IMG/VR virus record: IMGVR_UViG_3300031787_007614
Location: 1-64,000 of that record
Reading direction: 5' to 3' (one strand)
Length of the DNA: 64,000 nucleotides
Part shown: one piece after another, positions 2,827 through 62,039 of the stretch
How positions within the stretch are numbered: the first letter of the stretch is position 1
Layout of the letters: every line of letters starts with the position of its first letter
Program-made: the position numbers and the translations under genes
The notes under the pieces: generated by a model
What the model was told of the DNA's origin: nothing
The model's input: the letters and a program-made list of their open reading frames with translations, nothing else
Database searches by the model: none

Positions 2827-2839
2827 ATCATAAAGAAAC

Positions 2840-2917: not shown

Positions 2918-2918
2918 A

Positions 2919-3029: not shown

Positions 3030-3041
3030 TAAACTTCCTTA

Positions 3042-3108: not shown

Positions 3109-3112
3109 TCGC

Positions 3113-3141
3113 AGTATATATTTATTCTTTGGGCTTGTCAA
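3113..3141 (-). promoter_or_regulatory. sigma70 promoter of tmRNA
   Basis: TTGACA-17-TATACT. Confidence 0.8.
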
Positions 3142-3283
3142 CTGCTTTGGAGATGATGTCATACACTTGTGCGTATGCATCAGTAATTTTGTCTAGTTGT
3201 TGTTCCGACACCAAGTCTGTGTCCTCCAGACTGACCAAGTCTCGGGCTAGATTTTCTTGTAGTTTTTTTATGGGATTGAGCAC
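3122..3283 (-). CDS. Hypothetical protein, 53 aa (GTG start)
   Basis: Manual translation VLNPIKKLQENLARDL...; ATAAATA motif upstream. Confidence 0.5.
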   Translation of the reverse strand: MLNPIKKLQENLARDLVSLEDTDLVSEQQLDKITDAYAQVYDIISKAVDKPKE

Positions 3284-3825: not shown

Positions 3826-3831
3826 AATGTT

Positions 3832-3917
3832 TGGTACCAGAGACGGGACTCGAACCCGTATGCCCTTGCAAGCGGCAGATTTTAAGTCTGCTGTGTATAC
3901 CATTCCACCACTCTGGC
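3832..3917 (-). tRNA. tRNA-Leu(TAA)
   Basis: Long variable arm, anticodon loop CT-TAA-AA, ACCA. Confidence 0.95.
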
Positions 3918-3935
3918 TTTGCGTTATTTAATACA

Positions 3936-4010
3936 TGGTCCGGCGTAGAGGAATCGAACCTCTATAATGACTTTAGAAGAATCATGTCCTATCCGTTGAA
4001 CGAACGCCAG
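3936..4010 (-). tRNA. tRNA-Arg(TCT)
   Basis: Cloverleaf, anticodon loop CT-TCT-AA, CCA. Confidence 0.93.
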
Positions 4011-4015
4011 ATGTT

Positions 4016-4090
4016 TGGTGGGCCAACTTGGAATTGAACCAAGACTCGACCGATTATGAGTCGGTTGCTTTACCATTAAGCTATTGGCCC
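4016..4090 (-). tRNA. tRNA-CAT (probably Ile2, otherwise elongator Met)
   Basis: Cloverleaf, loop CT-CAT-AA; G1-C72 paired so not initiator. Confidence 0.9.
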
Positions 4091-5480: not shown

Positions 5481-5773
5481 AGCCTGGAATCATAAGTGAA
5501 GGCAGCAAGATATCGCATGCTGGCACGGCTGGGAATGTGCTGATTACAGAACCGTTGGTATGCCGCACGCCAACGCTTTTGGACAGGTGCTGGCGCATGG
5601 CAAGCAAGATAATGCAAGTGGCCAAATCTGCGCCCAATGCTGATGTGATTGGGCTTCCAGCCTGCAGGATACCATTTGTCGCGAGTTTGCCAATTGTAGT
5701 TTACCCAGACACCCATTCGGCGTTCTTGCATGATATACTTTTTAGATATATCTTGTGGTCTAAATCGGTTCAT
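5477..5773 (-). CDS. Hypothetical protein
   Basis: ATGA overlaps with neighbours. Confidence 0.6.
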   Translation of the reverse strand: MNRFRPQDISKKYIMQERRMGVWVNYNWQTRDKWYPAGWKPNHISIGRRFGHLHYLACHAPAPVQKRWRAAYQRFCNQHIPSRASMRYLAAFTYDSRL

Positions 5774-6564
5774 TTTTGCATCATCAGCGCATTGAAGTTT
5801 GCAGGAACAACAATTGTTTGCACACGACCGTTCTTGATACCTTCTGAGATATTCATCATAGCCTGCGCTTGCATGTAAGCAATTGACTGAGCACCTTGAT
5901 TACTCAATGCTTGCATACGTTCTGCTTCCATCTTAGCAGTCTTAACTTCAACTTCTTTTTGTTTCAATTCATTCTTGGCACGAACCAACTCATTTGCACT
6001 CGCAACCACAGAATCTGCAGGTACAATATTCCGAATCAACACTTGACCAACAACCAAACTACCATCAAGTTTTTCATCAGCCAAACTCTTTTGAATTTGT
6101 TCTTTAATTGCTTGTTCCATCACTTGGCGATTATCAGCCATGTCTAGTGCCTCGTACTTTCGGGCTTCTTTGTAGATGGCATTACGAGTGGTTTGAACCA
6201 TATAGTTGTACATCAAGTAGATGTCGCCGTTGTGCCGAGCATGGAATGCTTGACTCTTTTGGCTATACAACTCGGCTACCTGTGCTTGATTGATGTTATA
6301 GATAACCACTGCATCAAAGTCTTTCATTGTTGAGTTATCTTTAGCAACAGGTGTCATGTCCTCCAGTTTGACATTAACGTCCTTGATTGGGAATGTAAGA
6401 ACATCACCCCAAAAGGTTTGATTAAACGAGCCAGGCATTAATTCACCTTGCTGGACTTGTTTATCAAAGCCAACACGTACACCAACTTCACCTGTTTCGA
6501 TACGAGTACAACCTGTTGCCAGCACAGCCGCGGCAAGAACGGAGAGAGTCAAAATACGTTTCAT
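5770..6564 (-). CDS. SPFH/band-7 (prohibitin-like) lipoprotein
   Basis: Lipobox LATGC, IETGEVGV, C-terminal coiled coil. Confidence 0.88.
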   Translation of the reverse strand: MKRILTLSVLAAAVLATGCTRIETGEVGVRVGFDKQVQQGELMPGSFNQTFWGDVLTFPIKDVNVKLEDMTPVAKDNSTMKDFDAVVIYNINQAQVAELYSQKSQAFHARHNGDIYLMYNYMVQTTRNAIYKEARKYEALDMADNRQVMEQAIKEQIQKSLADEKLDGSLVVGQVLIRNIVPADSVVASANELVRAKNELKQKEVEVKTAKMEAERMQALSNQGAQSIAYMQAQAMMNISEGIKNGRVQTIVVPANFNALMMQK

Positions 6565-46763: not shown

Positions 46764-47489
46764 TTAGCGTTCATCCAAATAATCTTGTTGGCTTGTTTGT
46801 TGAGCCTGTTGTTTCATTGCTCTGCGTTTTTGAAACAACTTTACTGCCATGTCAGCATGGTCTAGGTTTTTAAATTTGCTGGGCATGGATCTATTACCTT
46901 GCCGCAGTTCAAATCCATCCTTTTCGTTGCCATAACATTCAAAGGTAACACCATATTCCATGGCGTAACTTTTTACCGGAGCAGATGATGTTTCTGACAT
47001 GTCATTGATAGGCTGTTGTGGGTTGCCTAGCTGAGTGTCTACTTTGTCCTCGATGCCATGCACTGTGCTGGGATCTGTCAACTCGTAGTCATCTTCTTCA
47101 ATTTCTTCTTCGGCTTGACCTTTTTCCACAGCGTCAACTGCTTTGTCTTTGAGTTCACGATCAACTCGAACTTTTTGTTCCAACTGATCAAGATATTGTG
47201 TAAGGTCCTTCTTGACCTTGCTCAACATATCTTCTTCAACTTCTTGCATGGCTTCTTCTAGTGCGGATTTTCTGGGCTCTACAGAATCACCCACCATGTA
47301 TCCATCCATTGGATGTGCTGGATCTTTTTTGGCACGCAACGCAGGACTGGCTGATTTAGGCTTGAACAGCGCAGGCAACTGTGGCACACCTTTTTGTTGT
47401 GTGTTAAGCCCATGCTTGACGCCTACTGGCGTAAGTTTACCTTCTACCGCCGCAAGGCGTTCCAGTATTGATCTAATGTCCGAACTCAT
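46764..47489 (-). CDS. Hypothetical acidic protein
   Basis: 241 aa, operon-coupled. Confidence 0.7.
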   Translation of the reverse strand: MSSDIRSILERLAAVEGKLTPVGVKHGLNTQQKGVPQLPALFKPKSASPALRAKKDPAHPMDGYMVGDSVEPRKSALEEAMQEVEEDMLSKVKKDLTQYLDQLEQKVRVDRELKDKAVDAVEKGQAEEEIEEDDYELTDPSTVHGIEDKVDTQLGNPQQPINDMSETSSAPVKSYAMEYGVTFECYGNEKDGFELRQGNRSMPSKFKNLDHADMAVKLFQKRRAMKQQAQQTSQQDYLDER

Positions 47490-47926
47490 GCTCTTTCTTC
47501 TTTCAGGTAACTTCTCAGCATCCAGCCATGCTTTTGATGAGCATCGATGCGTTCAGCAATGAAGTTAGCAATACCTTGTTGGTTTTCTTCAGTTGCTACT
47601 TGGAAGACTTGATTGAGAAGATCCAACATTTGGCCGTTGTTGGCCAAGAGTTCTTCTAGCATGAGTCGGGCACGTGGAATTTTTGTTTGGCCCTGTATTT
47701 TTGTTAATTCTACAAATCGTTCAAAACTACCAGGAGCATAGTCGCCCAGGGCACGTATGTATTCTGCTGTGGGATCTGTAGCACCATAAACATCGTCATG
47801 GATTGCGTCAAAGAAAGCGTGAAGCTGGCCAAAGTCTGGGCCTTCAACGTTCCAGTGGAACTGTTTGGCTTTGAGAGCAAAAGCCTCCTCAGTTGCCAGG
47901 AGTGTTTTTAAAGCGTCCGCTAACAT
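47486..47926 (-). CDS. dps: Dps/ferritin-like protein
   Basis: HWNV.G..F..LH, D..AE, K..WML. Confidence 0.92.
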   Translation of the reverse strand: MLADALKTLLATEEAFALKAKQFHWNVEGPDFGQLHAFFDAIHDDVYGATDPTAEYIRALGDYAPGSFERFVELTKIQGQTKIPRARLMLEELLANNGQMLDLLNQVFQVATEENQQGIANFIAERIDAHQKHGWMLRSYLKEERA

Positions 47927-48101
47927 TCTTATTCCTTTTGTATTCCTTGGGCGTGTTAGGCGTAGGATCAGTTGTATATTTACCACTCAACAAGGATCCG
48001 CCTGATCTTGACACCATGCCTAAGGCCTGGCTCACAGGTGCTATACTACCAGCACTGGTGCCGCCCACTGACGCATTTTCCATGATTTCTTGAATTTTCA
48101 T
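47889..48101 (-). CDS. Hypothetical protein (MKI.EI N-terminus)
   Basis: MKIQEIMEN..G.TSAG.IA. Confidence 0.65.
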   Translation of the reverse strand: MKIQEIMENASVGGTSAGSIAPVSQALGMVSRSGGSLLSGKYTTDPTPNTPKEYKRNKNVSGRFKNTPGN

Positions 48102-50382: not shown

Positions 50383-51497
50383 CATACCCAGCAAAGTTCC
50401 GATATCCTGTGTATCAACCTGCATCACAAAGTATTGATGTCACAGCTGATTGGGGTCTGGGCAGATTTGAAACTACCAACGATCCTGCACTGGCGCTGAG
50501 TCAACCGTGGTCTGTAGCAGCATTTCGTGTGCTGTGCAACGAGCCCGGCGTGTTTGATTATGATCCAGCACTGGCTGACATGGATCTCAGTCAGTTTGAT
50601 TTGGTACTGCTGAGTGACATTGAATACTACAGTGTTAAAGAAATACGTGCCTGGATTGAAAAAAACAAAATTCAACGTTATGTGTTGGCAGTAGGCGGTC
50701 TTGTGCAAGGAGAAGAATTGGATCAATCCTGCATGGTGTATCGCCCTTGGTGGGCTTACAATCTCTTGCGACACAACGAATACCAAGACACCTACCAAGA
50801 TCAAAAACCCTACATGTTTGAAGCACTGTTAGGAGCACGTAGACCGCACCGTGACTATGTGATGATGGCCATGGACAAAACTGGGCTGTTGGATCGTAGC
50901 ATTGTGACCTACAGAGATTGCTTTGAAGGCAAATTGATTGACAGAAACTGTGATCAATTTCAGCAGACTTTTTATGACACTCCGCTAAAGTGGCCTTACG
51001 TGAGTGCAAACTTAAATCCTGCATGGGAAGTCACGGACAACATCACTCGCAGTATCAGTCCATATGTGCCCTGGAACATCTATCAACGCAGTCATTACAG
51101 CATTGTGTGTGAAACACTGGGCACTGGCACAACATTTTTCTGGAGTGAAAAAGTTACCAAGTGTTTGTTAGCCAGAAGAATTTTTGTGTTTTTTGGCGCA
51201 CAAGGATTTCTTGCTCGCATGCGCGAACTAGGGTTTGAAACATTTAGCAGTATCCTTGACGAAAGCTACGATGAACATCCTGTGGACAGCATACGATTTG
51301 AACGGGCCATGCATCAGGTATTGCAGTTGGCATATTTTGAAAATCCCAAAGTGTTGTATGAACGCATACAAGCCATACTGGATCACAACCAAGCTAGATT
51401 GCGCAGTTACCAGATTCAGTTTCAAGCCACAATGTCTGATCTACTGCATCAACACATTGAAGGTGGCCATTGGTTATGGGATGACGAAGTGGGTTGA
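50370..51497 (+). CDS. Putative glycosyltransferase, GT10-like paralog 4
   Basis: SIVCET....WSEK..K......LGFETF...DESYD. Confidence 0.6.
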   Translation: MYTITYPAKFRYPVYQPASQSIDVTADWGLGRFETTNDPALALSQPWSVAAFRVLCNEPGVFDYDPALADMDLSQFDLVLLSDIEYYSVKEIRAWIEKNKIQRYVLAVGGLVQGEELDQSCMVYRPWWAYNLLRHNEYQDTYQDQKPYMFEALLGARRPHRDYVMMAMDKTGLLDRSIVTYRDCFEGKLIDRNCDQFQQTFYDTPLKWPYVSANLNPAWEVTDNITRSISPYVPWNIYQRSHYSIVCETLGTGTTFFWSEKVTKCLLARRIFVFFGAQGFLARMRELGFETFSSILDESYDEHPVDSIRFERAMHQVLQLAYFENPKVLYERIQAILDHNQARLRSYQIQFQATMSDLLHQHIEGGHWLWDDEVG

Positions 51498-52289
51498 AAT
51501 GTGCTGATAGAAGTTTTCAGCAATTTTTTCCTGTCCTTCGGGACCAGAATGATATCCAGGGTCGTCTCCTGAAAATGGGTAACTGCCACATATGGCTTGA
51601 GGACTTTTAGTTGTGTCCAATTGTATGTAGTGATCAGGGATAAGTTTAGGAAACGCATCACGCCATAAGGTATGATTGTCAGGATCGAATGGCCACAGCA
51701 AGTTGGGTAGCACTAAAAACTTGATGTCATCCAAGAACATGGTAATCACACCTTCTCGGATCATCCACTCGTCCTGTTGCTTTTTCCAAGCATTGTCATA
51801 GATTGAATCAATCCAGTGACGTATGCCGTTCTGCGCTTGTTTGGTAATGCGGCCCTGTCTGTACGGATGATCAAAGTTTTCTGCAAGAGTAAAAATAGTT
51901 TCGCAGATCATGTTTGATGGCTCCCGACCATAATTTACATTGCGTATGCCATCTTGTCTGTTGTAGCCATTGCCCAGTTTTCTATTTTGTAGGTGTCGTT
52001 CTAGTGGAGGATTTTCCCCGGCGCTGGGTGCCTGTGACCAATCATATGGCACAGAGTTTGCAGGTATTTCCATACGATCCCAGAAGGTAGGACCAATCAC
52101 AGCAAAGTCTGGACGCTGTCTGCGTATCTCGTCTATTTGTATACGGATGCCGCCGTTTGAACAACCTTGGCGTGCTAGGTTAACCAACTCCCAGCCACCT
52201 AGTTTTTCGGCCAAGCGTTCACTCCAAGCAGTGCCTGGCAAAGTTTGACTCACTGCCGAAAACGAGCAGCCTGCTACCATTAATTTCAT
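51474..52289 (-). CDS. SGNH/GDSL-like protein, paralog 5
   Basis: AGCSFS, NLA..G.SN, YH...G. Confidence 0.65.
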   Translation of the reverse strand: MKLMVAGCSFSAVSQTLPGTAWSERLAEKLGGWELVNLARQGCSNGGIRIQIDEIRRQRPDFAVIGPTFWDRMEIPANSVPYDWSQAPSAGENPPLERHLQNRKLGNGYNRQDGIRNVNYGREPSNMICETIFTLAENFDHPYRQGRITKQAQNGIRHWIDSIYDNAWKKQQDEWMIREGVITMFLDDIKFLVLPNLLWPFDPDNHTLWRDAFPKLIPDHYIQLDTTKSPQAICGSYPFSGDDPGYHSGPEGQEKIAENFYQHISTHFVIP

Positions 52290-52798
52290 AGTGTTTCCTT
52301 GTAACTGTTTCGGTGTTCTTCGCTGTGAAAACTAGCAATAATTTCTTTGTGCATGGGCAATTCGTCTAAGTTGTATGTGCCAGGTGGAATTGTATGTGTA
52401 ACTCCTTCACCAGGCCGTGCAAAAGTTACCAGTCTAGGATGCCACTGCACTGCACGATGTACCAGCACATGATGTATGTGTCCATAGTCTCCTAGTTCGT
52501 CATGGGTGAGCACTAGATCATAATCACGAGCAAGGTGCCAGCAGGCACGGTCGGCAGATTCTTCAGCCCAGCGTGTGAATACTTTTTGCTCGTTGTCATG
52601 CCAGTGGTCTTCAAAGCCCAAAAACACACAGTCGATTCCCCGACGTTTCCAAAACGCCAAAAGTTCTTGGCCTCGGGGATCATGCTCAGTGTACGTTAAA
52701 TAGCCAATGGTCCATTTGTGCTCAGGGTGCGCATGAATATAACTGTAACCAAATATCACACAGTCATCTGGATGCGCTACCATACACAATGCGTTCAT
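52286..52798 (-). CDS. PIG-L/LmbE-family deacetylase
   Basis: AHPDD, TH...G.YGH.HH. Confidence 0.85.
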   Translation of the reverse strand: MNALCMVAHPDDCVIFGYSYIHAHPEHKWTIGYLTYTEHDPRGQELLAFWKRRGIDCVFLGFEDHWHDNEQKVFTRWAEESADRACWHLARDYDLVLTHDELGDYGHIHHVLVHRAVQWHPRLVTFARPGEGVTHTIPPGTYNLDELPMHKEIIASFHSEEHRNSYKETL

Positions 52799-53640
52799 TC
52801 AAGTTCCCAAGCAGCAAAATGGCCGCGATCAATCAACAACATCTTAAATGCAGTTTTTTGTTCTGGTAACATTTTTGACCAAGCATTTCGATGAATACTC
52901 ACTGTGAGAGCATTTTTATCACGCATGAGTTCAAGTTTCTTATCAAACTGGTCAACTTCGCTATGACAAACATTTACCACACCGCCAAGTGTGTTTTGTT
53001 TGGTATAAAAATGATCCAAATGTCCATACTTGTATTGACAAAATCCTGAGTACAACATGAATTCTGTCAGCATGCCTTGGCGCTGAAACCATGTGGGAAA
53101 ACTTTCATGTGTTTTGATTGTGGTATCAGCAATCATAAAGCGTACAGTGTCATTGTGGAAGAAAAATGGCACACCGCCAGGGCCAGCTTGTTTGGTCATG
53201 TTGATGTCAAACAGCTGATCCACAATGTTCTTACTGGGTTTAAAAACATCAAATATATCCAATTGTCCCACAGTAAGCTGACCTTGTTCGTTAACCAATT
53301 TGGATATTTCCAAGGGTCTAACAAATATAGTCTTGGCGTCTAATACCATGGTGTAGACATTGTAACTTATAGACGCGGTGAGAAGTTTTAGAATCTGCTG
53401 GCTTACCCAGCCGTTTGCTATCCAAGCACTGCTGAATGCTGTGCGCGGCACTACCAAGACAGAGCTTGCTAGATCACCCCACCATGCTGGATCAATTTTT
53501 TCCGCTAGGGTTTCGTAATCATTGAGCACCACATAGATATTTCTTATGCCTATGTTGCGACAATAATTGTTTATGCTTTGTGCCTGAATTTTAAGGATCG
53601 GCAGTTCCTGTTCAAATACTACTGTGCAGATATCAATCAT
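52795..53640 (-). CDS. GT-A-like protein (DUF6492-like), paralog 2
   Basis: GW..QQ.LKL, LDAK, TEF.LY. Confidence 0.65.
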   Translation of the reverse strand: MIDICTVVFEQELPILKIQAQSINNYCRNIGIRNIYVVLNDYETLAEKIDPAWWGDLASSVLVVPRTAFSSAWIANGWVSQQILKLLTASISYNVYTMVLDAKTIFVRPLEISKLVNEQGQLTVGQLDIFDVFKPSKNIVDQLFDINMTKQAGPGGVPFFFHNDTVRFMIADTTIKTHESFPTWFQRQGMLTEFMLYSGFCQYKYGHLDHFYTKQNTLGGVVNVCHSEVDQFDKKLELMRDKNALTVSIHRNAWSKMLPEQKTAFKMLLIDRGHFAAWELE

Positions 53641-53673: not shown

Positions 53674-54030
53674 TTATTTTCCTGCTGCAAACAGTGCGGC
53701 ACCGCGATTGAAACTGTCGCTCCAACTTGCAGGTTGTCGGCCACCGCGCTTTTGACTCCAGGCATATCCTGCTCTGTGACCAGAACAGTCTTTGGTGCAT
53801 TGTGAACCTAGAAAACTTAATTCACGCAGTTGCTCGCGGGTCCACTTGTCTGGAATTGTGCCGTGTTTTTTCACAAACTCGTCGTGCAGTTGTTTGCCAG
53901 TAATGCCGTAGTCACGAGCAATGGTTTGCATCATGTGATCAATTGCGCTGTAGCTCTTGGGATCATCTAGATCTTTTTCCAAATCTTCTACAGCGCCTTC
54001 TTTCAACTGTGCAAACTCGTATGCTCTCAT
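53674..54030 (-). CDS. Two-module putative internal virion protein
   Basis: MRAYEF start; LKE/LRE junctions; CT.DCSGH.AGY.W module. Confidence 0.7.
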   Translation of the reverse strand: MRAYEFAQLKEGAVEDLEKDLDDPKSYSAIDHMMQTIARDYGITGKQLHDEFVKKHGTIPDKWTREQLRELSFLGSQCTKDCSGHRAGYAWSQKRGGRQPASWSDSFNRGAALFAAGK

Positions 54031-55862
54031 TTTTTAGGTTGCACCGCTGTGGGCATGTTGCGATACACACGCTTTTGGGGATCATACACAGTTTTAAGTG
54101 GGCCCAAGCCAGCCAGTTTCTTTACTCTAGCAATCATGTCTTGATAATCATCACCGTAGTCGGCTTCTTTTTCTTTGGGAGTTGATTTGCTTTCGTCAGC
54201 CTTTTTAGGCAAGTCTGCATAGTCCTGCTTGCGATCAGCACCGTGGAACTCTTGAGCAACGTCTTGGCTGATGCCAACTTTTTTTGCAAATTCAGGATTG
54301 TGTGCGGCTGCTGCCATGGTGCGGAATTGTGCTTGGCTGGTTGACTTTTCATTCAAGTCACCTTCTTGCATGTTCTTTAATAGTTCTTTTGCTTTTTCAA
54401 CACTAACCATTGGTCTTGGGTGCTTGCCGTCTATTACACTTTGTAAATATTCTTTGCTAAAGCCTTTTGGTGCTTCTGCAGCCGGTTTATTATCAGCAGG
54501 TGATGTCATTGTTGCACTTGGCTTGAATCCGCCAGTGAAACCGCCTTGGCCATCAGGAGTAACTCTAGCATTGGCACCACCTGCGCCCAGTGCCATTGCA
54601 CCTGCCAATGCCGCGCCACCTAATTTTTCTTTCCAGCCTTCGTCAAGATCACCTTCCGCTACACCTTGTTCTCTTACACTACTGCGGAAATGTCTGGCAT
54701 CATTTGCATCGTGTTTGCCGCGTTCTAATCCTTTGGCCCATTCGTCATTTTTACGGGCTTCTCTTGTGGCACTATATGGATTGTCTCTGATGGTCATACC
54801 TTGTTTGTATGCTCGACGACCCAGTTCGTATGCTACGCCAACACCTGCTAGTTCATACTCTTCCGCCATGCCTTTCTTCTTCAATGCTTCCTTATTTCTC
54901 ACCCAGCCTTTGCCACCGCATTCTGGGCACTCATCATCGTGTGTATCTATTCCAGTGCCATCGCAAGAACCACATTCATGCTTTTCACCAGTGTTACCGT
55001 AAGCATCTGACTCCGAGCCTTCCGCCATGCCTTGTCCTAGATTGGCTATGTAACCATCAGGGCCAGTCCATTGATCTTTATAGTCTTGCCATTCTTTTAG
55101 ACCCCAAGCTATAGGAAACTGATGCCAAGCCCACATTCCGTGGGTATTAAACTCGCTAGAAAATTCCTGTATGTCAGCCTGTGTAATGCCTGAGGTATTG
55201 GATTGTTTGGCGACCTCAATCAACCAGTGCGCCATAGTTTCGCCACCGTCGTCAAGATTACCTACTTTTTCTAATTTATTAAACCTATCTACACCTTGCC
55301 TTTCAAAGTTGCGGCAAATTTTTTCAAGCCAATTTATAAATTCCTGGCCCCATTTGGCCAATGCTGTTTCTGGGTCGCTGCCTGTTCTTGCAGTGAGAGA
55401 CTTATTCAAACTATCTACACTTTGCCTAGCAGTAGCACCACCTGTGATCTGACCCATCATTGAGTCAAACTTTTGATCGCCAGTTGCTTCCGCCACACCT
55501 TGCTTCTTGTTTAACTCTTTGTTTAGAATCTTTTCAGCATCCTTGGCTACTTTTTTAGCAGTGGTTGCTTTAGCAGTGTATTCTTTTTTGCCGCCTTCAT
55601 CGTTACTACCATCACGCCCTGGAGGTGTTTGTGATTTGTCCATTTCCATCACACCTTCAGACTTGTTGCCATAATTGCCAGCGCCTTTTTTGCGACACTG
55701 AACCAAGCGTCCAGATGCATAGGCTGATGGCCATACTTTTGCTGACGCTTTTACTTTGTAGTAGCAGGCGTCTTTCTTTTCCATCATCAGCATTTCACTG
55801 AACATGGGACCACCACAGTGTGGGCATGACTGTGAGGCTTCAAATAAGTCGTCTATAATCAT
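54027..55862 (-). CDS. Modular polyprotein with G-[VM]-A-E junctions
   Basis: QGVAE, QGMAE, KGMAE, QGVAE separate unrelated modules, including Zn-finger-like and RMF-like ones. Confidence 0.8.
   Translation of the reverse strand: MIIDDLFEASQSCPHCGGPMFSEMLMMEKKDACYYKVKASAKVWPSAYASGRLVQCRKKGAGNYGNKSEGVMEMDKSQTPPGRDGSNDEGGKKEYTAKATTAKKVAKDAEKILNKELNKKQGVAEATGDQKFDSMMGQITGGATARQSVDSLNKSLTARTGSDPETALAKWGQEFINWLEKICRNFERQGVDRFNKLEKVGNLDDGGETMAHWLIEVAKQSNTSGITQADIQEFSSEFNTHGMWAWHQFPIAWGLKEWQDYKDQWTGPDGYIANLGQGMAEGSESDAYGNTGEKHECGSCDGTGIDTHDDECPECGGKGWVRNKEALKKKGMAEEYELAGVGVAYELGRRAYKQGMTIRDNPYSATREARKNDEWAKGLERGKHDANDARHFRSSVREQGVAEGDLDEGWKEKLGGAALAGAMALGAGGANARVTPDGQGGFTGGFKPSATMTSPADNKPAAEAPKGFSKEYLQSVIDGKHPRPMVSVEKAKELLKNMQEGDLNEKSTSQAQFRTMAAAAHNPEFAKKVGISQDVAQEFHGADRKQDYADLPKKADESKSTPKEKEADYGDDYQDMIARVKKLAGLGPLKTVYDPQKRVYRNMPTAVQPKK
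54653..55502 (-). repeat. Dispersed 16-bp repeat (C/A)AAGG(T/C)(G/A)T(G/A)GCGGAAG
   Basis: Copies at 54653-54668, 54860-54875, 55019-55034, 55487-55502; variant at 56728-56743. Confidence 0.75.
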
Positions 55863-56212
55863 TTCTTTTTAGTGGCCACGTTGATGGCCTTTCCTGTGCG
55901 GTTGGGGTTGGGATCTTGTCTGCGTTTTCTTGCGGCTGCTGACGCACGACCTTTTTTGCCCAGGGCATGTGCTTTGGCTTGCGGCAAACACTTGGGCTTG
56001 CCTTCTTTTGAACTGCCTCTAGCACAATCACCACGGATCTTGCCGTCGGGCCCAAAGCGTACCCACTTGTCTTTGAACCAATCACGGAGATTTTCTTCCA
56101 ACTCGGTTTCGCTCACAGGCACACAATTGGGCACCTGACGACCACCTTTGTTTTTCATGCCTGCTTGGCGATAACCAGTCCAGCAGGCTTCAAGAATTTC
56201 TTTATATCTCAT
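55859..56212 (-). CDS. Basic two-module protein (CW.GY...VPNCV; L..WF..KW)
   Basis: MRYKEILE start. Confidence 0.75.
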   Translation of the reverse strand: MRYKEILEACWTGYRQAGMKNKGGRQVPNCVPVSETELEENLRDWFKDKWVRFGPDGKIRGDCARGSSKEGKPKCLPQAKAHALGKKGRASAAARKRRQDPNPNRTGKAINVATKKK

Positions 56213-56218
56213 GATGGG

Positions 56219-59200
56219 TTATTTATTGCGTTTGGCTCGAGCCCGTCCAGCCTTCATGTTGGCCATCCAGTGTGCCAATTGTCCTTTGCGACCGCCTTGT
56301 TTGGCCACTTTACGCAGGGTGCTTACTGATGCTTTGGTGGGCACGCCGTGTCGCTTTGAATCGCCTTTGTCTTGGGGATTCCGACCGTCAGCAAAGTTTT
56401 CACCTACGTTGTATGTGGGATCAGTTTTTTGACGCTTGATGCCAGCAGGTTGATTGGGATCTACAGGATCAATGTCAGTGGTGGTTAACCCTAGTTTTTC
56501 CAACTGCTTGATGTATTCATGTTCAAGATCTTCGTCGCCAAAACTCACAATAGTACTGGGTGGTCCTTTGCCAAAATCGTCAGTGTTATCTCTGTCTAAG
56601 TTAGCAATGTTCTTGCCCAACTTGTACCAGTCATACATGTCTGACACATCCACTCGCACAGTGCCCGCTGGCATTGTGGGTCGGCTTTCAGGACCAGGAG
56701 GATCAAAGTTTCCGTAGCGATCCTTGCCTTCGGCTACACCTTCTGTCATGATTGGCACAACTTCAAAGCCTTCGCCTGACACTCCCCGACCATTGTTTCG
56801 CAACCATTGAGCCGCTACACGGTTAGCATCGCCTTGATTGTTGCCCACGCCTGAAAATCTATGAACTTCTTCACCATTGACCAACACCTTCCATGCACCA
56901 GAGAATGTGCCTGGCGTGGCTCGCTGTTGTGCCAAGGCTGCTGTGCTTCCAGGGTAGACCACCTCTATATCTGGTTCAATGTCAATGATACCACCCGATG
57001 CTGCATCTGCAGGCCGATCCCATTGTTCAGTATCCACCACCATGTAGTCAGCAGCAACCACATTGTTTCTAGCAGCCCAGGCTTGGAGAACATATCTGCC
57101 TTGTGCCTGTTCCGCTGGATTGCCCATGTTAAATCTAAACTGATAGTCAGGTGCTGGGCCAGTAAAACTGCCATACAGGCCTGGATCCGAGCGTAGCACA
57201 ATGGCATAGCGACCGTTGGGGTCATTGGGGCGGCCACCACCTTGAGAACCTGGCGGTGCAGTAAAGGCACTAGCTGTGTCGTCGTCTTGTGTAGATTGTG
57301 CATCCAAATTATACGGACGCACAGGTTCAGCCACAATAGATTGTCGTGTGTTGGCCCAAGACGGATAGCCATCATCCCCCAAGGCTTTTTCAATGGCTTC
57401 TTCTCGAGAGGTGGCAACAACTTCTACACTGGCATAACTATTGCCAGGATTGGAAACGTTCCACCACATCTTTTCACCGCTTGTTTTATTACGCTCCGTC
57501 TTGCGTTGTAGTTGTGCTTGCTTGACAAAACTACGCAAGGCAGCCTTGGGAATCTTGCCAGCCACATAGTCAGCAAAGTATCGGATTGTGTCTGACCCTT
57601 TTTGATCCTGAGTCAACAGTTTGTATAGTTTCTTTTGATACTCTTCTCGATAGGCTTCAGGGTTAAGTGCTGCACTCATGGCCACTGTGAAACGCAACAG
57701 AGTGTTTTCAATCTTGTCAAAGTTGTCATCCAGCCAGTCACCACCCGGCGAACGGAATTCAATGTGTCCGCTCTTGGTGTTGATTGATGTGTACTTGTCT
57801 GTGCTGCCTGAATGGATGGCCTTGGAAGCCAGTTCACCCATTTGACCTTTCATCTTGTCCAGCAAACGCTGTGCGTCTTCGGGGTTGGACCGCACACGAT
57901 CACGCACCTTGCCTAGTGCTGATTTGGTGTAGGTATTGGAACTGCGACCAAATTGTTTGAGCACATACTCGTCGCCCAACAGCAAGGCCAGTTTTACATA
58001 GTCCAAACGATCTAAACTGTAGTCAGGCACTGATATGTTGATGTGCAGGCCAGTCGAACTGTTGGTATAAACGCCCATGCGTCCAGCCCAGGCCTTCACG
58101 GCATTTAAATCTTTCAGCAGTTCATCTATGGGCATGGGCGGGCTCACAAACTCCAAGCCTTCGTCGCCGTCATTGTCGCCTTCCAAACTGGCGTCTGGTT
58201 CTACTACATAGAATTGATTGTTGGGTCCAGGTCTGTCGCCGGACTGATGATATCTTGTGTTCACTCGCACTTCACGACCCACAGCCTGACTGAATTCGTC
58301 AGCCACTTGATCTGCGTCAATCTCGCCGCTGTTCATGCTAGTCCAGTAGGGCCAATTCATTCCATACATTTGCTCAACCTCACTCATTCTGTCAAGGTCT
58401 GTGGCGTCTAACCAGTCGCTTTCGTCATAATTTTCTTGGAATTCTTCCCGCCATTCATCAAAGGCTTCATTGTAGTAAGTACTCGAAGGATCAGCGTCTA
58501 CATTGGCTGCAAATTCATCAAATGCTTCGTTTCGTTCATCACCAGTTAACTCGTTAGGATTCCATTCATCTTCATTTACATTATTCCGAAGCCAGTCACG
58601 AATGTAATCTTGGCTTTCACCGCCCCAGTCATCGCGAAGTTTTTCATCCAGCCATTCCTGGAAATCGTCCTGCATTCTTTCACGCAGGCGTTCAACATCT
58701 CTACGGCCGTTGTAGTCGCCATCATGAAAGAATCGCACAGCATCATCAATGCTAACACAGCGTTCATCCTGATCATAGTCTGGTTCCATTTCAGGATCTT
58801 CGGATTCCATACCAGGCACAATCATTTCAAATTCCATGCCAGCAATGGCACCTGTTTTGGCAGCTTCCCTGCGCAAATTTTTGCTGCCCATGTTTATTTC
58901 AAACAGGTCTTGTTCTTCAAACAGTTCAAATTCTTGTGCTAGACTTTCTGCTAACTTTACCTTGCCATCTGCTCGCAACAGTTGTGGATGGCCTTGCGAA
59001 TCAGTGGCCAGTCGCATCTTGTTGGCTTCTGTGCCAGTTTGTCCTGGATGCACATCCACACTCAGTGCCATTTCAAATCGAGGATCGTTGCGTTCGGCCC
59101 AGGTGGGAATGTATCCAGATGACTCACGAATGTCTTCATGGTCAAACAGTTCTGGGTGTGCATCAGCAAAGTCTCGCATGATAATGCCAGCCACAGCGTT

Positions 59201-60388
59201 TGCTTCGTTCTCCACAGGAGAGCCTGTGTTGCCAGATGTGTGATCCAATTGTTCTAATTCCTGTTGGCGGCAGTGTGCCAGTTCGTGTGCCACAGTGCGA
59301 AGAATATCCATCACATGTCGATCGCGCAGATTCACATGCAAAACATGCAGCTCTGGTTGGTACATGCCAAATGAACGATTTTGTTCACTCCATCCGTCAT
59401 TGTCATGTAGTACAATTTCAGGCATGCGTTCAATGCCCAAGCGTTCAGCAGTGTCTTGAATAAACTGTTGCACCATGCTCTCAGTGTCATCTTCATTCAA
59501 GAACATTTGTGTGCTGGCAGCAACACCATCTTCTGAACTGTAGGGTTGTCCTTGATGGCCTTCGCGCATGCTTTCGCCACCACCACCGTCACCACCTTCG
59601 CCTGATTCTCCTCCGTAGCCAAATCCAGGAGACCAATAGCTGCCAAATCCATAACGCACTCGGGATTTCTTTTTTCGGCGTTCTTGTAGACTCAGCTCGT
59701 GATCTTGTGCGGCTGTTCTAGCTGTGCGCAAATCCTTGATGCAACCTTTGTTACGCAGGATTTTGAACACAATGTTTTCACACCCAAACTCGCCGTGAGC
59801 ATCCAAGCCACTTTGGCGCATGGCCTTGATCTTGTCCCACAGTCTGCTCATGGATTCAGCGTTGCCAGATTCAATTGCTGAATGTATTCTAGCATCCAAA
59901 TCTTCGACCTTGGCTCGCACACAGGTGTCGTCAATTCTGGCACGTTTTCTGCGTGGCACTTGAATCCATTCGTCACGTGGGATAGAATACTCACCTTGAC
60001 TCACAGGAGACTCGGCTGCATTTTGCACATACAGTTCCACAGGCACGCCGCCGATGCTCAACTTGTGTTCATCGTTATATTGGTATTTTTTGGCATTGAA
60101 CAGTTCCTGATAAACTTCGTCGTCAGCAGGAAACTCCACCACAAGGTGTAGATCAATGTCGGAATATGGGGTATAGCTGTAGGCAGCATTACTGCCTGAG
60201 ATGGTTATGTCACGGACGTCAAGGTCACCTACGCCAAGAAATTCGCGAAAATTGTCAGCAATGGCCAACAGCTTTTCGCGTACTTCGGGTAACAATTGCT
60301 CGTCCCTGCCCCAGATTTTAGGGTTGAGACGATTGTGAAACTTTACAGCATCACTCAGCTTGAAGGAATCCAGTTCGTTGATGTTCAT
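56219..60388 (-). CDS. Polyvalent protein: nucleotidyltransferase + zincin + putative amidoligase + variable modules
   Basis: GS...SDIDLH; HELAH; G.EFE, EFVSPP, GLHIN, KY.SIN, IEFR. Confidence 0.82.
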   Translation of the reverse strand: MNINELDSFKLSDAVKFHNRLNPKIWGRDEQLLPEVREKLLAIADNFREFLGVGDLDVRDITISGSNAAYSYTPYSDIDLHLVVEFPADDEVYQELFNAKKYQYNDEHKLSIGGVPVELYVQNAAESPVSQGEYSIPRDEWIQVPRRKRARIDDTCVRAKVEDLDARIHSAIESGNAESMSRLWDKIKAMRQSGLDAHGEFGCENIVFKILRNKGCIKDLRTARTAAQDHELSLQERRKKKSRVRYGFGSYWSPGFGYGGESGEGGDGGGGESMREGHQGQPYSSEDGVAASTQMFLNEDDTESMVQQFIQDTAERLGIERMPEIVLHDNDGWSEQNRSFGMYQPELHVLHVNLRDRHVMDILRTVAHELAHCRQQELEQLDHTSGNTGSPVENEANAVAGIIMRDFADAHPELFDHEDIRESSGYIPTWAERNDPRFEMALSVDVHPGQTGTEANKMRLATDSQGHPQLLRADGKVKLAESLAQEFELFEEQDLFEINMGSKNLRREAAKTGAIAGMEFEMIVPGMESEDPEMEPDYDQDERCVSIDDAVRFFHDGDYNGRRDVERLRERMQDDFQEWLDEKLRDDWGGESQDYIRDWLRNNVNEDEWNPNELTGDERNEAFDEFAANVDADPSSTYYNEAFDEWREEFQENYDESDWLDATDLDRMSEVEQMYGMNWPYWTSMNSGEIDADQVADEFSQAVGREVRVNTRYHQSGDRPGPNNQFYVVEPDASLEGDNDGDEGLEFVSPPMPIDELLKDLNAVKAWAGRMGVYTNSSTGLHINISVPDYSLDRLDYVKLALLLGDEYVLKQFGRSSNTYTKSALGKVRDRVRSNPEDAQRLLDKMKGQMGELASKAIHSGSTDKYTSINTKSGHIEFRSPGGDWLDDNFDKIENTLLRFTVAMSAALNPEAYREEYQKKLYKLLTQDQKGSDTIRYFADYVAGKIPKAALRSFVKQAQLQRKTERNKTSGEKMWWNVSNPGNSYASVEVVATSREEAIEKALGDDGYPSWANTRQSIVAEPVRPYNLDAQSTQDDDTASAFTAPPGSQGGGRPNDPNGRYAIVLRSDPGLYGSFTGPAPDYQFRFNMGNPAEQAQGRYVLQAWAARNNVVAADYMVVDTEQWDRPADAASGGIIDIEPDIEVVYPGSTAALAQQRATPGTFSGAWKVLVNGEEVHRFSGVGNNQGDANRVAAQWLRNNGRGVSGEGFEVVPIMTEGVAEGKDRYGNFDPPGPESRPTMPAGTVRVDVSDMYDWYKLGKNIANLDRDNTDDFGKGPPSTIVSFGDEDLEHEYIKQLEKLGLTTTDIDPVDPNQPAGIKRQKTDPTYNVGENFADGRNPQDKGDSKRHGVPTKASVSTLRKVAKQGGRKGQLAHWMANMKAGRARAKRNK

Positions 60389-60405: not shown

Positions 60406-61266
60406 TTACTTGGCTGTAGCTGGTTCTTCCACGGGCACAACATCCACAGGGGTGCTGGATGCCATGATTTCAGGCTCAGTTATATCAACTGGTTGCTTGG
60501 CTGCATCATGTGCATTGGCAATCTTAGGAGCAGCAATAGCATGCAAGTCTTGGTACAACTTGTCCTGTGTTTGCGCATCAAACACATAGGTGCCCACGTG
60601 TTTCAACAACACACGTTTGTCGATATACACTTTGCCGCCTAGATCACGCCAGTTTTCGCAGAATGTCCAGTCTTCTGAATAGTAGCGGTTTTCACGCACA
60701 GCAGTGTCAAAGTAGGTTTTCATGTACTTGTCCAGCGCAGGATCTAGACCAATGTCATTGTTGAAATGACGCACAGCAGGGTGTGCATTCAGTTTGTCAA
60801 ACACATCTTTCTTGATCAACAAGAATCCTGTGCCAGTCTTGGTAACTTCTACCAAGTTGTCCACGCCTTCTTCTTGACCTGGAATGCCATTCACACACCA
60901 TTTAACTGGCAGTGATTTCATGGGATACAATCCACCAATCACATCCACTTGGCGATTTAGCAACACCAACAAATGCCAGGGTTCCCAGCCAATGTCCGCG
61001 TCAATAAACATCAAGTGTGTTGAACCTTCTGTATTCAAAAACTTTGCAGTCAGAGTGTTTCTAGCACGACTAATCAAACTTTCATTAGTCATGGTTTCTA
61101 CAGTCCAATCAATGCCTAGTTGTCGGCAGGTATTGCCCCATTTGATAAAACTCATGAATGTTGCTTCTGTCAGCTGGCCCCCATAACAGGGCATACAGAT
61201 GTGAACACGAGTGGTTTTTAGATATTCAAGGTCGACTTGAATTTGAACTTGTTGTGGCTCTGCCAT
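60406..61266 (-). CDS. GT-A-like glycosyltransferase
   Basis: SLI.RARN, FIDAD, TGF.LI, SED..FC. Confidence 0.75.
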   Translation of the reverse strand: MAEPQQVQIQVDLEYLKTTRVHICMPCYGGQLTEATFMSFIKWGNTCRQLGIDWTVETMTNESLISRARNTLTAKFLNTEGSTHLMFIDADIGWEPWHLLVLLNRQVDVIGGLYPMKSLPVKWCVNGIPGQEEGVDNLVEVTKTGTGFLLIKKDVFDKLNAHPAVRHFNNDIGLDPALDKYMKTYFDTAVRENRYYSEDWTFCENWRDLGGKVYIDKRVLLKHVGTYVFDAQTQDKLYQDLHAIAAPKIANAHDAAKQPVDITEPEIMASSTPVDVVPVEEPATAK

Positions 61267-61322: not shown

Positions 61323-62039
61323 TTACGACCTAGACTCTTCCATGTAGTCAATAACGGGCTGATTTTCTCTAGCTTGATAGCCTGCCTTCATGCCACCCAC
61401 ACTCAGTTGATTCTCGCTGGTAAATGTCGCGGCCCAGCCTTGATTCTCAGCCACAGTACCAATGGCAGTGTCCAACAGTTTGACAACATTAGCAGCCAAT
61501 TTGGGATTCTTTTGTGTTGCTGGATACAAGCTCATCACAAGAGCTGTTTTGCGTTTTTCGTTTAGTGTGGGCCATGCGCCACGAATCTCTGTGGCCGACG
61601 TCATGCCTGGACCAAACTCCACTGTGGGTAGGTAGGCCATGTAGGCATGTTTTGCAAATGGCTCTAATCGCTTTGCACCTATCAGTGGTTGCAAGTATGC
61701 AGGATTGCCATCTTTCTTTATGCCGCCTGCTTGTGGAGGTTTGTTGGCGTCTTTATCAGAACGCACAAAAATTAATGTGTCTGTAGCAGGGTTAAATTGC
61801 GCAGTAATTTCTTCAGCACGAAACGGTGATTTGACCTGCACAAAATGTCCAGCATCTACTCCAGCCAGCTTGGCCAACTTTTCTTTTACTGCAAATGGAA
61901 ATGGTCTAGCTGAGGTATCGTTTGTGGCCGCAACAAAAACTTCAGCATCAGGGAATGCCCGTTGTGCGGATTGATAAAGTGCTAGGTGCCCTGCATGGAA
62001 AGGATGAAATCCCCCGGGCATGATTACTACAGTGCTCAT
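61323..62039 (-). CDS. HxGH nucleotidyltransferase (cytidylyltransferase-like)
   Basis: PGGFHPFHAGH, SAT.IR. Confidence 0.8.
   Translation of the reverse strand: MSTVVIMPGGFHPFHAGHLALYQSAQRAFPDAEVFVAATNDTSARPFPFAVKEKLAKLAGVDAGHFVQVKSPFRAEEITAQFNPATDTLIFVRSDKDANKPPQAGGIKKDGNPAYLQPLIGAKRLEPFAKHAYMAYLPTVEFGPGMTSATEIRGAWPTLNEKRKTALVMSLYPATQKNPKLAANVVKLLDTAIGTVAENQGWAATFTSENQLSVGGMKAGYQARENQPVIDYMEESRS

What the first reader, a model, noticed from the sequence alone, without database searches (positions are those of the whole stretch)
53674..60388. Capsid-cargo polyprotein system with DNA-repeat-delimited, protease-cleavable modules
Seen: a 16-bp repeat encoding [QKE]G[VM]AE occurs four times in 54027-55862 and once in 56219-60388, each time between unrelated mini-domains. 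Other junctions read L.E. Neighbouring genes begin with M-[KRNI]-x-x-[ED]-[ILF]. Known: T4 prohead protease cuts after [ILV]-x-E and internal proteins have N-terminal targeting peptides. Inference: the repeat is both a recombination joint and a cleavage site, letting the phage swap small effectors that are packaged, released and injected.
Basis: partly seen in the sequence, partly recalled or inferred. Interest (0 to 1): 0.78.

Follow-up and report, generated by a model that had tools for sequence, protein, structure and literature searches.

The report
Phage cassette polyproteins with conserved linkers
A giant T4-related freshwater phage strings unrelated small protein modules into long proteins, joining them with one short linker conserved as both peptide and DNA. 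That linker marks exactly where modules are swapped between phages and looks like a cutting site for the phage's head protease, so it may be how the phage reshuffles proteins it carries into its host.

Summary
The window holds five in-frame copies of a 15-nt unit encoding [QKE]G[VM]AE, against 0.03 expected. All four genes in the operon start with M-x-x-x-[DE]-[ILF].

The window is the start of a 364-kb freshwater jumbo phage. It has a T4-type head module, including an S77 prohead protease.

In more than 200 relatives the motif is about 100-fold enriched and cuts the proteins into modules of fixed length that recur in different orders. One 485-nt cassette is 98.8% identical between two phages, and the identity starts and stops exactly inside two linker copies. 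Synonymous sites of the linker are conserved: Ala GCG is 70-82% there against 7% in the background.

So the recombination-joint role is well supported. Cleavage is supported only indirectly:
- [VMI]-A-E matches the T4 gp21 rule L/I-x-E.
- All 13 Tat signals are internal, and 12 start 3-7 residues after a linker.
- Some genes read MRAQEFTQGVAE, which parallels the T4 leader MKTYQEFIAE.

Packaging and injection rest on analogy with T4. I found no published description. I rate it a new variant of T4 internal proteins and polyvalent proteins.

The parts
56219..60388 (-). 1389-aa multidomain protein, first gene of the operon. Leader MNINELDSF, nucleotidyltransferase (aa 14-233), M78-like HExxH zincin (59093-59353), Amidoligase_2 (aa 691-885), then one linker and a C-terminal module.
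56729..56743 (-). Linker copy 5 (E-G-V-A-E, aa 1216-1220). The C-terminal module (56222-56728) is appended here. The G003 orthologue stops 11 aa after this point, and the G005 orthologue lacks exactly the 12 nt encoding GVAE.
55859..56212 (-). 117-aa protein with leader MRYKEILEA. It carries two basic Cys/Trp mini-domains shared with cyanophage proteins such as P-SSM2 gp114.
54027..55862 (-). 611-aa cassette polyprotein with leader MIIDDLFEA (55836-55862). Modules: aa 1-73, 74-125, 126-281, 282-334 (DnaJ-like zinc finger/DUF7129), 335-403 (weak RMF-like), 404-611.
55644..55658 (-). Degenerate linker E-G-V-M-E (aa 69-73). Homologues read EGVAE here, and the 75%-identity match to L060 ends here.
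55488..55502 (-). Linker copy 1 (Q-G-V-A-E, aa 121-125). It is the left breakpoint of the 485-nt cassette shared at 98.8% with L060. Metagenome contigs diverge here (loose ends at 55487 and 55505).
55020..55034 (-). Linker copy 2 (Q-G-M-A-E, aa 277-281). It is the right breakpoint of the same cassette.
54861..54875 (-). Linker copy 3 (K-G-M-A-E, aa 330-334).
54654..54668 (-). Linker copy 4 (Q-G-V-A-E, aa 399-403).
54567..54653 (-). Signal-peptide-like segment (charged n-region, Ala/Gly/Leu-rich hydrophobic run, A-N-A) that starts right after linker copy 4. Read by eye only; no predictor was available.
   Evidence: sequence; by analogy with the Tat modules
54348..54365 (-). Degenerate junction E-G-D-L-N-E (aa 500-505). 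Relatives carry NMQEGMAE|... here. It is followed by a DUF3008-like mini-domain (aa 507-559) that also begins 121Q gp51, annotated 'virion structural protein'.
53674..54030 (-). 118-aa protein, last gene of the operon. It begins MRAYEFAQLKEGAVE|D, a T4-CTS-like leader followed by a degenerate linker.

Best explanation
The four genes encode cargo proteins of a T4-related jumbo phage, built from interchangeable in-frame cassettes.

Anatomy. Each protein begins with a short leader (consensus M-R-A/I-x-E-F/L/I-I/L/F-x-E) that resembles the T4 capsid targeting sequence. Modules are joined by a six-residue linker, [QEK]-G-[VM]-A-E-[GEA].

Shown. The linker is the exact place where modules are gained, lost and exchanged between phages and between loci. 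Its DNA (consensus CAA GGT GTG GCG GAA GGC) is conserved at synonymous sites. Every junction therefore offers 15-18 bp of identity for homologous recombination that keeps the reading frame.

Inferred. The leader takes the precursor into the prohead core. The phage's gp21-type S77 protease (genome 262533-263171) cuts after the Glu of [VMI]-A-E and of the leader's [ILF]-x-E, which frees modules of 35-230 aa. These leave the capsid with the DNA at the next infection. Some carry Tat or Sec-like signals and would be exported to the periplasm. Others would act in the cytoplasm: a sigma-70 region 4 module, a zinc finger, an RMF-like module, and the nucleotidyltransferase, zincin, amidoligase and deaminase domains.
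For: Genome context. 364-kb virus record with terminal repeats and T4 head synteny: portal, two small core proteins, S77 protease, scaffold, gp23-type capsid protein. The protease is 32% identical to T4 gp21 and keeps the HP and GVSSRG motifs.

Motif enrichment. 374 motifs in 120 homologues (70.8 k aa) and 228 in 122 further cluster representatives; about 3 would be expected in each set.

Modularity.
- Segments of fixed length recur with up to 22 different left neighbours.
- BLAST break points peak at the motif's Glu.
- The 485-nt cassette at window 55501-55017 is 98.8% identical to L060 3434-3918, with identity starting and ending inside two linker copies.
- The G003 orthologue of the 1389-aa protein lacks the module behind the linker, and the G005 orthologue lacks exactly the GVAE codons.

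DNA-level constraint.
- In 47 junctions that share no flank, Ala is GCG 70% (background 7%). Over all 71 motif copies Val is GTG 81% (background 23%). Flanks fall to about 0 bits at once.
- Unrelated junctions have identical codons in 71% of comparisons, against about 44% expected.

Cleavage.
- The T4 gp21 motif is L/I-x-E, and the T4 CTS is processed at residues 8 and 10 (PMC9026906).
- T4 IPII and IPIII start MKTYQEFIAE|A, and T4 gp22 starts MLKEQLIAE|A.
- P1 is Glu 366 times, Asp 2 times; P3 is V, M or I.
- Of the 13 Tat signals, all internal, 10 begin 3-7 aa after the motif and 2 after a degenerate DVAE.
- Two genes start MRAQEFTQGVAE|G with the canonical DNA.
- 70% of leader ORFs have [LIVMF]-x-E ending at residues 8-12, against 9% of other ORFs.
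- Leader and motif co-occur (odds ratio 4.5, p = 2.5e-4).
- In the AF2 model of one module the linker-bearing ends have pLDDT below 50, around a helical core of 65-86.
Against: - No proteomic or experimental evidence shows that these proteins are in virions or are cut.
- No canonical QGVAE occurs in the head proteins of G000 or G002. They have only looser sites: ALLE|G in the capsid protein, ALAE and AVME/AVLE in the scaffold.
- The near-invariant P4 Gly, P2 Ala and P5 Gln are not explained by the T4 rule.
- [LIVM]-x-E is not depleted inside modules (observed/expected 1.19, against 1.15 in other proteins). Specificity would have to come from accessibility or from the extended motif.
- The operon lies among sugar-modifying and replication genes, not head genes, and no T4-type late promoter is nearby. 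The T4 ip genes are also scattered.
- The nearest cultured relatives by capsid protein, plus cyanophage P-SSM2, show neither the linker nor enriched leaders, so their virion proteomes cannot help.
- Other phage proteases exist: an M78-like zincin in the same operon and two ClpP-like genes.
- Tat-signal modules would have to refold after ejection before export.
Confidence: 0.55

Rival explanations
1. The linker is cut, but not by the prohead protease and not in the capsid. The polyproteins would be processed in the infected cell's cytoplasm by another protease: the M78-like zincin of the 1389-aa protein, a ClpP-like enzyme, or a host enzyme. The modules, including the Tat-exported ones, would then act in the producing cell.
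For: A zincin (weak Peptidase_M78, phrog_87 'metallo-protease') sits in the same operon. Iyer et al. 2017 propose autoproteolytic metallopeptidase domains in polyvalent proteins (PMC5512222). Tat signals make immediate sense in the producing cell. The operon is not in the head module.
Against: The motif's P3-P1 pattern and strict Glu at P1 match the S77/gp21 rule, and the tools gave no specificity information for M78 or ClpP enzymes. T4-CTS-like leaders, including one fused directly to the motif, have no role in this model. The G002 fragment (167 kb) carries motif polyproteins, S77 and the capsid gene but gave no zincin hit. That record is only about 47% complete, so this point is weak.
Confidence: 0.2
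2. The linker is not cut at all. It would be only a flexible, recombination-friendly spacer, an in-frame cassette joint, and the proteins would work as intact multidomain chains.
For: Breakpoints and synonymous conservation show a DNA-level role. The linker ends are disordered in the model. There is no direct evidence of cleavage.
Against: Internal Tat signal peptides placed 3-7 aa after the motif would be useless without a new N-terminus. V, M and I alternate at P3 by non-synonymous changes while Glu stays fixed and Asp is avoided, which indicates peptide-level selection. Degenerate junctions keep [LVM]-x-E after the DNA motif is lost.
Confidence: 0.15
3. The peptide is a protease site, but the DNA-level conservation is a by-product and not selected as a recombination site. 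It could come from recent common descent or repeated gene conversion of the linker, or from an RNA or translation effect such as pausing at rare GCG or SD-like AAGG...GAAGG.
For: The linker contains rare codons and two AAGG repeats. Modules are 78-100% identical across different contexts, which suggests recent spread.
Against: Flanks on both sides are unrelated while the linker's synonymous sites stay fixed in 47 independent junctions. Observed exchanges begin and end inside the linker. Gene conversion between linkers is itself recombination at the linker.
Confidence: 0.1

Closest known systems
T4 internal proteins IPI, IPII, IPIII with capsid targeting sequence (CTS), cut by prohead protease gp21
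   Same: Short N-terminal leader of the same style: T4 reads MKTYQEFIAE|A, and here we see MRATEFITEA, MRAQEFIVE and MRAYEF.... The cut would follow Glu with a hydrophobic residue at P3. The genome has a gp21-type S77 protease. The genes are scattered outside the head cluster. The cargo behind a conserved leader is hypervariable, and T-even IP loci carry conserved sequences implicated in shuffling (Repoila 1994, cited in PMC2839356).
   Different: T4 internal proteins are single small proteins cut once. Here up to 7 or more modules are chained by an internal linker that is conserved at P5-P1' and at synonymous DNA sites. The leader has one residue fewer before the acidic-aromatic pair. Encapsidation is not shown.
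Polyvalent proteins of phages and conjugative elements (Iyer, Burroughs, Anand, de Souza, Aravind 2017; PMC5512222)
   Same: Many unrelated domains sit in one polypeptide and are proposed to be delivered with the DNA. The 1389-aa protein combines nucleotidyltransferase, zincin and amidoligase domains, and relatives add deaminase-like and sigma-70 region 4 modules.
   Different: A term search of that paper found no mention of a linker, of cyanophages or of amidoligase, so it describes no conserved inter-domain linker. The modules here are mostly tiny orphan domains. Exchange is cassette-like at one fixed motif.
Inner-body and ejection proteins of phiKZ, 201phi2-1 and SPN3US, processed by a gp21-related protease
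   Same: Many head-internal proteins are cut after Glu at a three-residue motif, some at several sites (PMC5694885; PMC9026906).
   Different: Their P3 is small (S/A/G-x-E or A-x-E), not V, M or I. Their propeptides are long. No repeated linker or cassette shuffling is reported.
Glycine-rich motifs (GRMs) of T-even gp38 adhesins, and PeSL cassettes of T4-type phages
   Same: Short conserved sequences that separate hypervariable segments are where recombination swaps the segments (PMC3157838; PMC2839356).
   Different: GRMs are structural core elements of one folded domain, and PeSLs are intergenic promoter-terminator units. Here the joint is inside an ORF, lies between independent modules, and doubles as a probable protease site.

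Membership tests
T4-type CTS-bearing internal (capsid cargo) proteins | N-terminal leader of about 10 aa with hydrophobic or aromatic targeting residues, followed by an L/I-x-E processing site | tested here: met
   All four window genes start M-x-x-x-[DE]-[ILF], and three have [ILFV]-x-E within 15 aa. In relatives, 61 of 87 leader ORFs have [LIVMF]-x-E ending at residues 8-12, against 20 of 232 others. T4 reference sequences were read. The register differs from T4 by one residue.
T4-type CTS-bearing internal (capsid cargo) proteins | Genome encodes a gp21-type (S77) prohead protease with catalytic His and Ser, in a T4-like head module | tested here: met
   PF03420 hit at 83.9 bits, genome 262671-263129. 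Synteny is portal, two small core proteins, protease, scaffold, gp23-type capsid protein. Identity to T4 gp21 is 32%, with HP and GVSSRG kept.
T4-type CTS-bearing internal (capsid cargo) proteins | Protein is present in the virion and is cut by the prohead protease | not testable with these tools
   No proteome is available. The only hint is a homologous mini-domain at the start of 121Q gp51, annotated 'virion structural protein'.
Polyvalent proteins (Iyer et al. 2017) | Two to 15 unrelated domains, several of them enzymatic or effector-like, in one phage or plasmid polypeptide | tested here: met
   The 1389-aa protein has NTP_transf_2-like, M78-like zincin and Amidoligase_2 domains. The 611-aa protein has 6 modules. 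Homologues carry Sigma70_r4, TAT_signal, DUF6321 and DUF5872.
Polyvalent proteins (Iyer et al. 2017) | Delivered into the recipient cell with the DNA | not testable with these tools
   Inference only.
phiKZ-type inner-body or ejection proteins | Cleavage motif S/A/G-x-E and long (over 100 aa) propeptides | tested here: not met
   P3 here is V 317, M 49, I 7. Leaders are about 10 aa. The capsid protein is closest to PA5oct and Rak2-like phages, not to phiKZ.
In-frame recombination motifs (gp38 GRM type) | Conserved short motif flanking variable segments, with exchange break points inside the motif | tested here: met
   A cassette with 98.8% identity is bounded by two motif copies. HSP ends peak at the motif. 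Synonymous-site conservation is shown.

The most novel reading that the evidence does not exclude
This would be an integron-like cassette system that works inside an open reading frame. In this reading, the 15-18-nt linker is itself selected, and perhaps targeted by a phage nuclease or recombinase, as a universal in-frame recombination site. At the same time it encodes the prohead-protease site. A population of jumbo phages could then assemble, from a shared pool of thousands of cassettes, combinatorial sets of small proteins that are co-packaged, released in the capsid and injected. Some of these would be re-exported through the host Tat pathway.
Probability: 0.3. Interest if true: 0.9.

Novelty: new variant of a known kind. 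Interest (0 to 1): 0.8.

Why it matters
If correct, this shows how large phages keep a fast-evolving arsenal of injected proteins. One short sequence would solve two problems at once. It lets any module be swapped in frame by ordinary homologous recombination, and it lets the head protease release each module.

The system also defines thousands of orphan mini-domains from lake and marine viromes as a coherent class of candidate host-takeover or anti-defence factors (3608 clusters at 50% identity). It gives their natural boundaries, which makes single modules directly clonable for screens.

It would extend the T4 CTS and gp21 model to polyproteins. It also offers a natural design for packaging several proteins in phage capsids.

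Tried and rejected
- Whole-protein alignment for structure prediction. An alignment of the 611-aa protein with module fragments was misaligned by MAFFT, which anchored on the repeated linker (A1). I did not use it. Only one module with its flanks was modelled (A2). Its pLDDT of 60 was too low for a fold search.
- Function of the modules. Pfam, PHROGs, NCBIfam, PADLOC, PDB sequence search and the ESM Atlas gave almost nothing beyond weak DnaJ zinc-finger, RMF, M78 and amidoligase hits.
- Timing of expression. The T4 late promoter TATAAATA occurs only 9 times in the genome, once in front of the gp67-like gene and never near the operon, so timing cannot be read.
- Co-occurrence of linker polyproteins with S77 or with the zincin. 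Inconclusive, because the related records are fragments. G003 and G005 lack both the capsid and protease genes.
- Cultured relatives. The capsid-closest isolates Vibrio phage 2.275.O, PA5oct and 121Q, plus cyanophage P-SSM2 (chosen for its shared mini-domains), carry neither the linker nor enriched leaders. P-SSM2 and S-SKS1 share mini-domains but join them without the linker. Published virion proteomes therefore cannot be transferred.
- Synonymous-rate test on strictly orthologous junctions. Only one such pair exists in the fetched loci. I replaced it with pairs sharing one flank, which are not independent.
- Depletion of [LIVM]-x-E inside modules. None found.
- Literature. Full-text searches for GVAE with phage, for polyprotein with prohead protease, and for cyanophage cleavage and proteome found no description of this system.
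- Rejected readings. Chance or an assembly artefact is ruled out, because the stretch is held at 97-99% of sampled words in at least 14 runs from about 10 studies. Internal translation starts at the GTG/ATG codon are unlikely, because the AAGG lies too close and GTA is also used.

Full report
WHAT IS THERE

The finding covers four tightly packed or overlapping genes on the minus strand:
- 56219-60388 (1389 aa)
- 55859-56212 (117 aa)
- 54027-55862 (611 aa)
- 53674-54030 (118 aa)

A 15-nt unit encoding [QKE]-G-[VM]-A-E occurs four times in the 611-aa gene and once in the 1389-aa gene. The degenerate DNA pattern gives 5 hits in the window against 0.03 expected, though I derived the pattern from the copies themselves.

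An independent back-translated pattern finds 9 copies in the whole genome. All are in frame on the minus strand, and the reversed control finds none. They lie in only four proteins. The other two proteins are at genome 72191-73582 and 205329-207965.

The window's own copies differ at synonymous positions and are 81-94% identical. All four genes begin M-x-x-x-[DE]-[ILF]: MRAYEF, MIIDDLF, MRYKEIL, MNINEL.

GENOME

The window is the first 64 kb of a 364,404-bp virus record with direct terminal repeats. The record has a T4-type head module in T4 order: portal, two small core proteins, S77 prohead protease (262533-263171), scaffold, gp23-type capsid protein.
- The protease is 32% identical to T4 gp21 and keeps the HP and GVSSRG motifs.
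- The capsid protein is closest (62-66% identity) to Vibrio phage 2.275.O, Pseudomonas phage PA5oct and the Rak2-like coliphages.
- The stretch is held nearly unchanged in at least 14 sequencing runs, mostly labelled freshwater or lake metagenomes (several are labelled fungus metagenome), from about ten studies. It is not an assembly artefact.

THE MOTIF IS A FAMILY-WIDE MODULE DELIMITER

The 611-aa protein has more than 2500 relatives in the word-indexed search and 3608 clusters at 50% identity in the exhaustive search.
- The best 120 relatives carry 374 G[VMIL]AE motifs in 70.8 k residues. Another 122 cluster representatives carry 228 G[VMI]AE motifs. About 3 would be expected by chance in each set.
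- The logo is [QEK]-G-[VM]-A-E-[GEA]. The last position is Glu 366 times and Asp twice. The hydrophobic position is V 317, M 49, I 7.
- Cutting at the motif gives segments of exactly recurring length (156, 155, 69, 35, 106, 232 aa and others) that appear in many orders. The 69-aa module has 22 different left neighbours, and the 156-aa module has 18 left and 17 right neighbours.
- Without using the motif, BLAST similarity between family members ends at the motif's Glu and begins at the motif's start. 29% of break points lie within 5 residues of a motif, against 6% at random.

NUCLEOTIDE-LEVEL EXCHANGE

The 156-aa module of the window, together with both flanking linkers (55501 down to 55017, 485 nt), is 98.8% identical to positions 3434-3918 of an unrelated contig (L060). 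The sequence to the right is unrelated. To the left it is unrelated for about 140 nt, and further upstream only 75% identical. Identity starts at AAGGTGTGGCGGAAG and stops directly after CAAGGCATGGCGGAAGGC.

The 1389-aa protein behaves the same way. Its G003 orthologue ends 11 residues after ...VVPIMTE and so lacks the module behind the linker. The G005 orthologue reads ...YPIMTE|GKDRYGNF, an exact loss of the 12 nt encoding GVAE. In lake metagenomes, contigs diverge from the window at 55487 and 55505, which is linker copy 1.

DNA-LEVEL CONSERVATION

I collected 47 junctions from G000 and 30 IMG/VR loci that share neither flank. Their consensus is CAA GGT GTG GCG GAA GGC.

| Codon | In linker | Background in the same genes |
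|---|---|---|
| Ala GCG | 70% (47 flank-independent junctions); 82% (all 71 copies) | 7% |
| Val GTG | 81% (all 71 copies) | 23% |
| Gly GGT | 77% (47 junctions); 83% (all 71 copies) | 43% |

Information content falls to background one codon outside the core. Unrelated junctions use identical codons in 71% of comparisons, against about 44% expected. In pairs that share only one flank, the linker has fewer synonymous differences than the shared flank (14.7% against 24.4%). Those pairs are not independent.

EVIDENCE FOR CLEAVAGE (INDIRECT)

1. T4 gp21 cuts after Glu at L/I-x-E, and the T4 capsid targeting sequence is processed at its residues 8 and 10 (PMC9026906). I read the T4 sequences directly. 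IPII and IPIII start MKTYQEFIAE|A, IPI has ...ITE|A, gp22 starts MLKEQLIAE|A, and gp23 has ...FLTE|AEIGG. The linker's [VMI]-A-E fits this rule.
2. All 13 twin-arginine (Tat) signal peptides in the first 120 proteins are internal. Ten begin 3-7 residues after the motif and two begin after a degenerate DVAE. Pfam recognises one at residues 78-98, directly behind a motif at 70-73. A Tat signal needs a free N-terminus. The window's own 611-aa protein has a signal-like hydrophobic stretch right after its fourth linker (read by eye).
3. In related loci, 87 of 319 distinct ORFs carry the leader, against about 3% expected. Typical leaders are MRAQEFIVE, MRAREFITE and MRATEFITEA. 70% of them have [LIVMF]-x-E ending at residues 8-12, against 9% of other ORFs. 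Two genes start MRAQEFTQGVAE|G with the canonical DNA, so the linker sits where T4 has its CTS cleavage site. Leader and linker co-occur (odds ratio 4.5).
4. Degenerate junctions that have lost the DNA motif still end in [LVM]-x-E: EGVME, DLNE, PIMTE, SSVRE.
5. In an AF2 model of one module with its flanks, the linker-bearing ends are below pLDDT 50, around a helical core of 65-86.

WHAT IS NOT SHOWN

No data place these proteins in virions, and no data show processing.
- The head proteins of G000 and G002 have looser candidate sites (ALLE|G conserved in the capsid protein as in T4's PLLE|G; ALAE and AVME or AVLE in the scaffold). None has the canonical linker.
- [LIVM]-x-E is not depleted inside modules.
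- The near-invariant Gly, Ala and Gln of the linker go beyond the T4 rule. They may reflect a narrower specificity or the DNA constraint.
- The genome also has an M78-like zincin in the same operon and two ClpP-like genes, which are possible alternative proteases.
- Co-occurrence tests were inconclusive because the related records are fragments.
- The capsid-closest isolates and cyanophage P-SSM2 lack the linker and the leader arrays. Cyanophages P-SSM2 and S-SKS1 join the same basic mini-domains without it, in genes beside the terminase genes.
- One mini-domain of the 611-aa protein begins 121Q gp51, annotated 'virion structural protein'.

COMPARISON AND NOVELTY

The system works like the T4 internal proteins: CTS, gp21, hypervariable cargo, and conserved sequences at the T-even IP loci implicated in shuffling (Repoila 1994, cited in PMC2839356). 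It also resembles the polyvalent proteins of Iyer et al. 2017 (PMC5512222). Its recombination logic resembles the glycine-rich motifs of gp38 adhesins (PMC3157838).

It differs in three ways. It chains many modules. It joins them with one linker conserved at both peptide and synonymous-DNA level. It exchanges cassettes exactly at that linker.

It does not fit the phiKZ-type motif S/A/G-x-E. Full-text searches found no description of it. I rate it a new variant of a known kind.

My confidence in each step is:

| Claim | Confidence |
|---|---|
| Recombination joint | about 0.85 |
| Cleavage at the linker | about 0.65 |
| Cleavage by the S77 protease inside the prohead, with injection | about 0.5 |

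Noticed in passing
window 2664-3145 (-), with tRNA genes at 799-873, 1077-1151, 3832-3917, 3936-4010 and 4016-4090 (-): The phage encodes a permuted (two-piece) tmRNA. Rfam tmRNA_permuted scores 115 bits and alpha_tmRNA also passes its threshold. ARAGORN gives the tag ANDEKFLMAA. Five tRNA genes (Asp, Glu, Leu, Arg, Met) lie beside it. This may hint at the host lineage.
   Followed up: partly
window 1670-2560 (-): A phage-encoded Gram-negative porin (Pfam Porin_4, E = 2.8e-25) with a signal peptide-like start. This is an unusual auxiliary gene and a host hint (Gram-negative).
   Followed up: partly
window 47486-47926 (-) and 47889-48101 (-): A ferritin/Dps-like gene (Pfam Ferritin, E = 6e-24) overlaps a 70-aa leader-bearing gene (MKIQEIMENASVGG...). 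Both genes recur close together, beside the leader-gene arrays, in L029. In other related loci one or the other recurs there (Dps-like in L013, L038, L040; the 70-aa gene in L028, L032, L034-L036, L042).
   Followed up: partly
window 61323-62039 (-): A cytidylyltransferase/NMNAT-like gene. In relatives the same enzyme is extended at its C-terminus by linker-joined modules (P0082, P0086; L055 8360-9919, 519 aa). So ordinary enzymes can be recruited into the cassette system. The window copy ends with a degenerate ...GTVAEN....
   Followed up: partly
window 5770-6564 (-); 51474-53640 (-); 60406-61266 (-): An SPFH/Band 7 gene lies upstream. A block of sugar-modifying genes flanks the operon: PIG-L deacetylase, a DUF6492 protein, and a phrog_1574 protein. 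These suggest surface or DNA glycan modification genes around the cargo operon.
   Followed up: no
G000 genome 124885-125421 (-) and 127101-127628 (-), outside the window: Two ClpP-like protease genes (Pfam CLP_protease, E = 1.9e-82 and 3.5e-28) exist in addition to the S77 prohead protease.
   Followed up: no
L029 2644-7650 (G005 orthologue of the 1389-aa protein): This orthologue has an extra insert with a cytidine/deoxycytidylate-deaminase-like zinc motif (H-A-E ... C-S-P-C) between the C-terminal mini-domains. This junction is not marked by the canonical linker.
   Followed up: no
window 55823-56407: Summed contig depth in four metagenomes rises 2-5 fold over the 117-aa gene and the end of the 1389-aa gene, with many variant contigs. 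These basic mini-domains are therefore shared by many co-occurring phages.
   Followed up: no
whole G000 genome: The T4 late-promoter octamer TATAAATA is under-represented (9 occurrences against about 26 expected from composition). One copy sits 13 nt upstream of the gp67-like head gene at 264368, so late promoters may differ from those of T4.
   Followed up: partly
G000 genome 72191-73582 (-) and 205329-207965 (-), outside the window: Two further linker-bearing proteins. The 463-aa protein has a perfect T4-style leader (MKLNDVILE|A), hydrophobic segments and a C-terminal DUF6321, and it lies among small membrane proteins. The 878-aa protein has weak PHROG hits to 'virion structural protein' and tape-measure families, two QGMAE linkers, and no leader.
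   Followed up: partly
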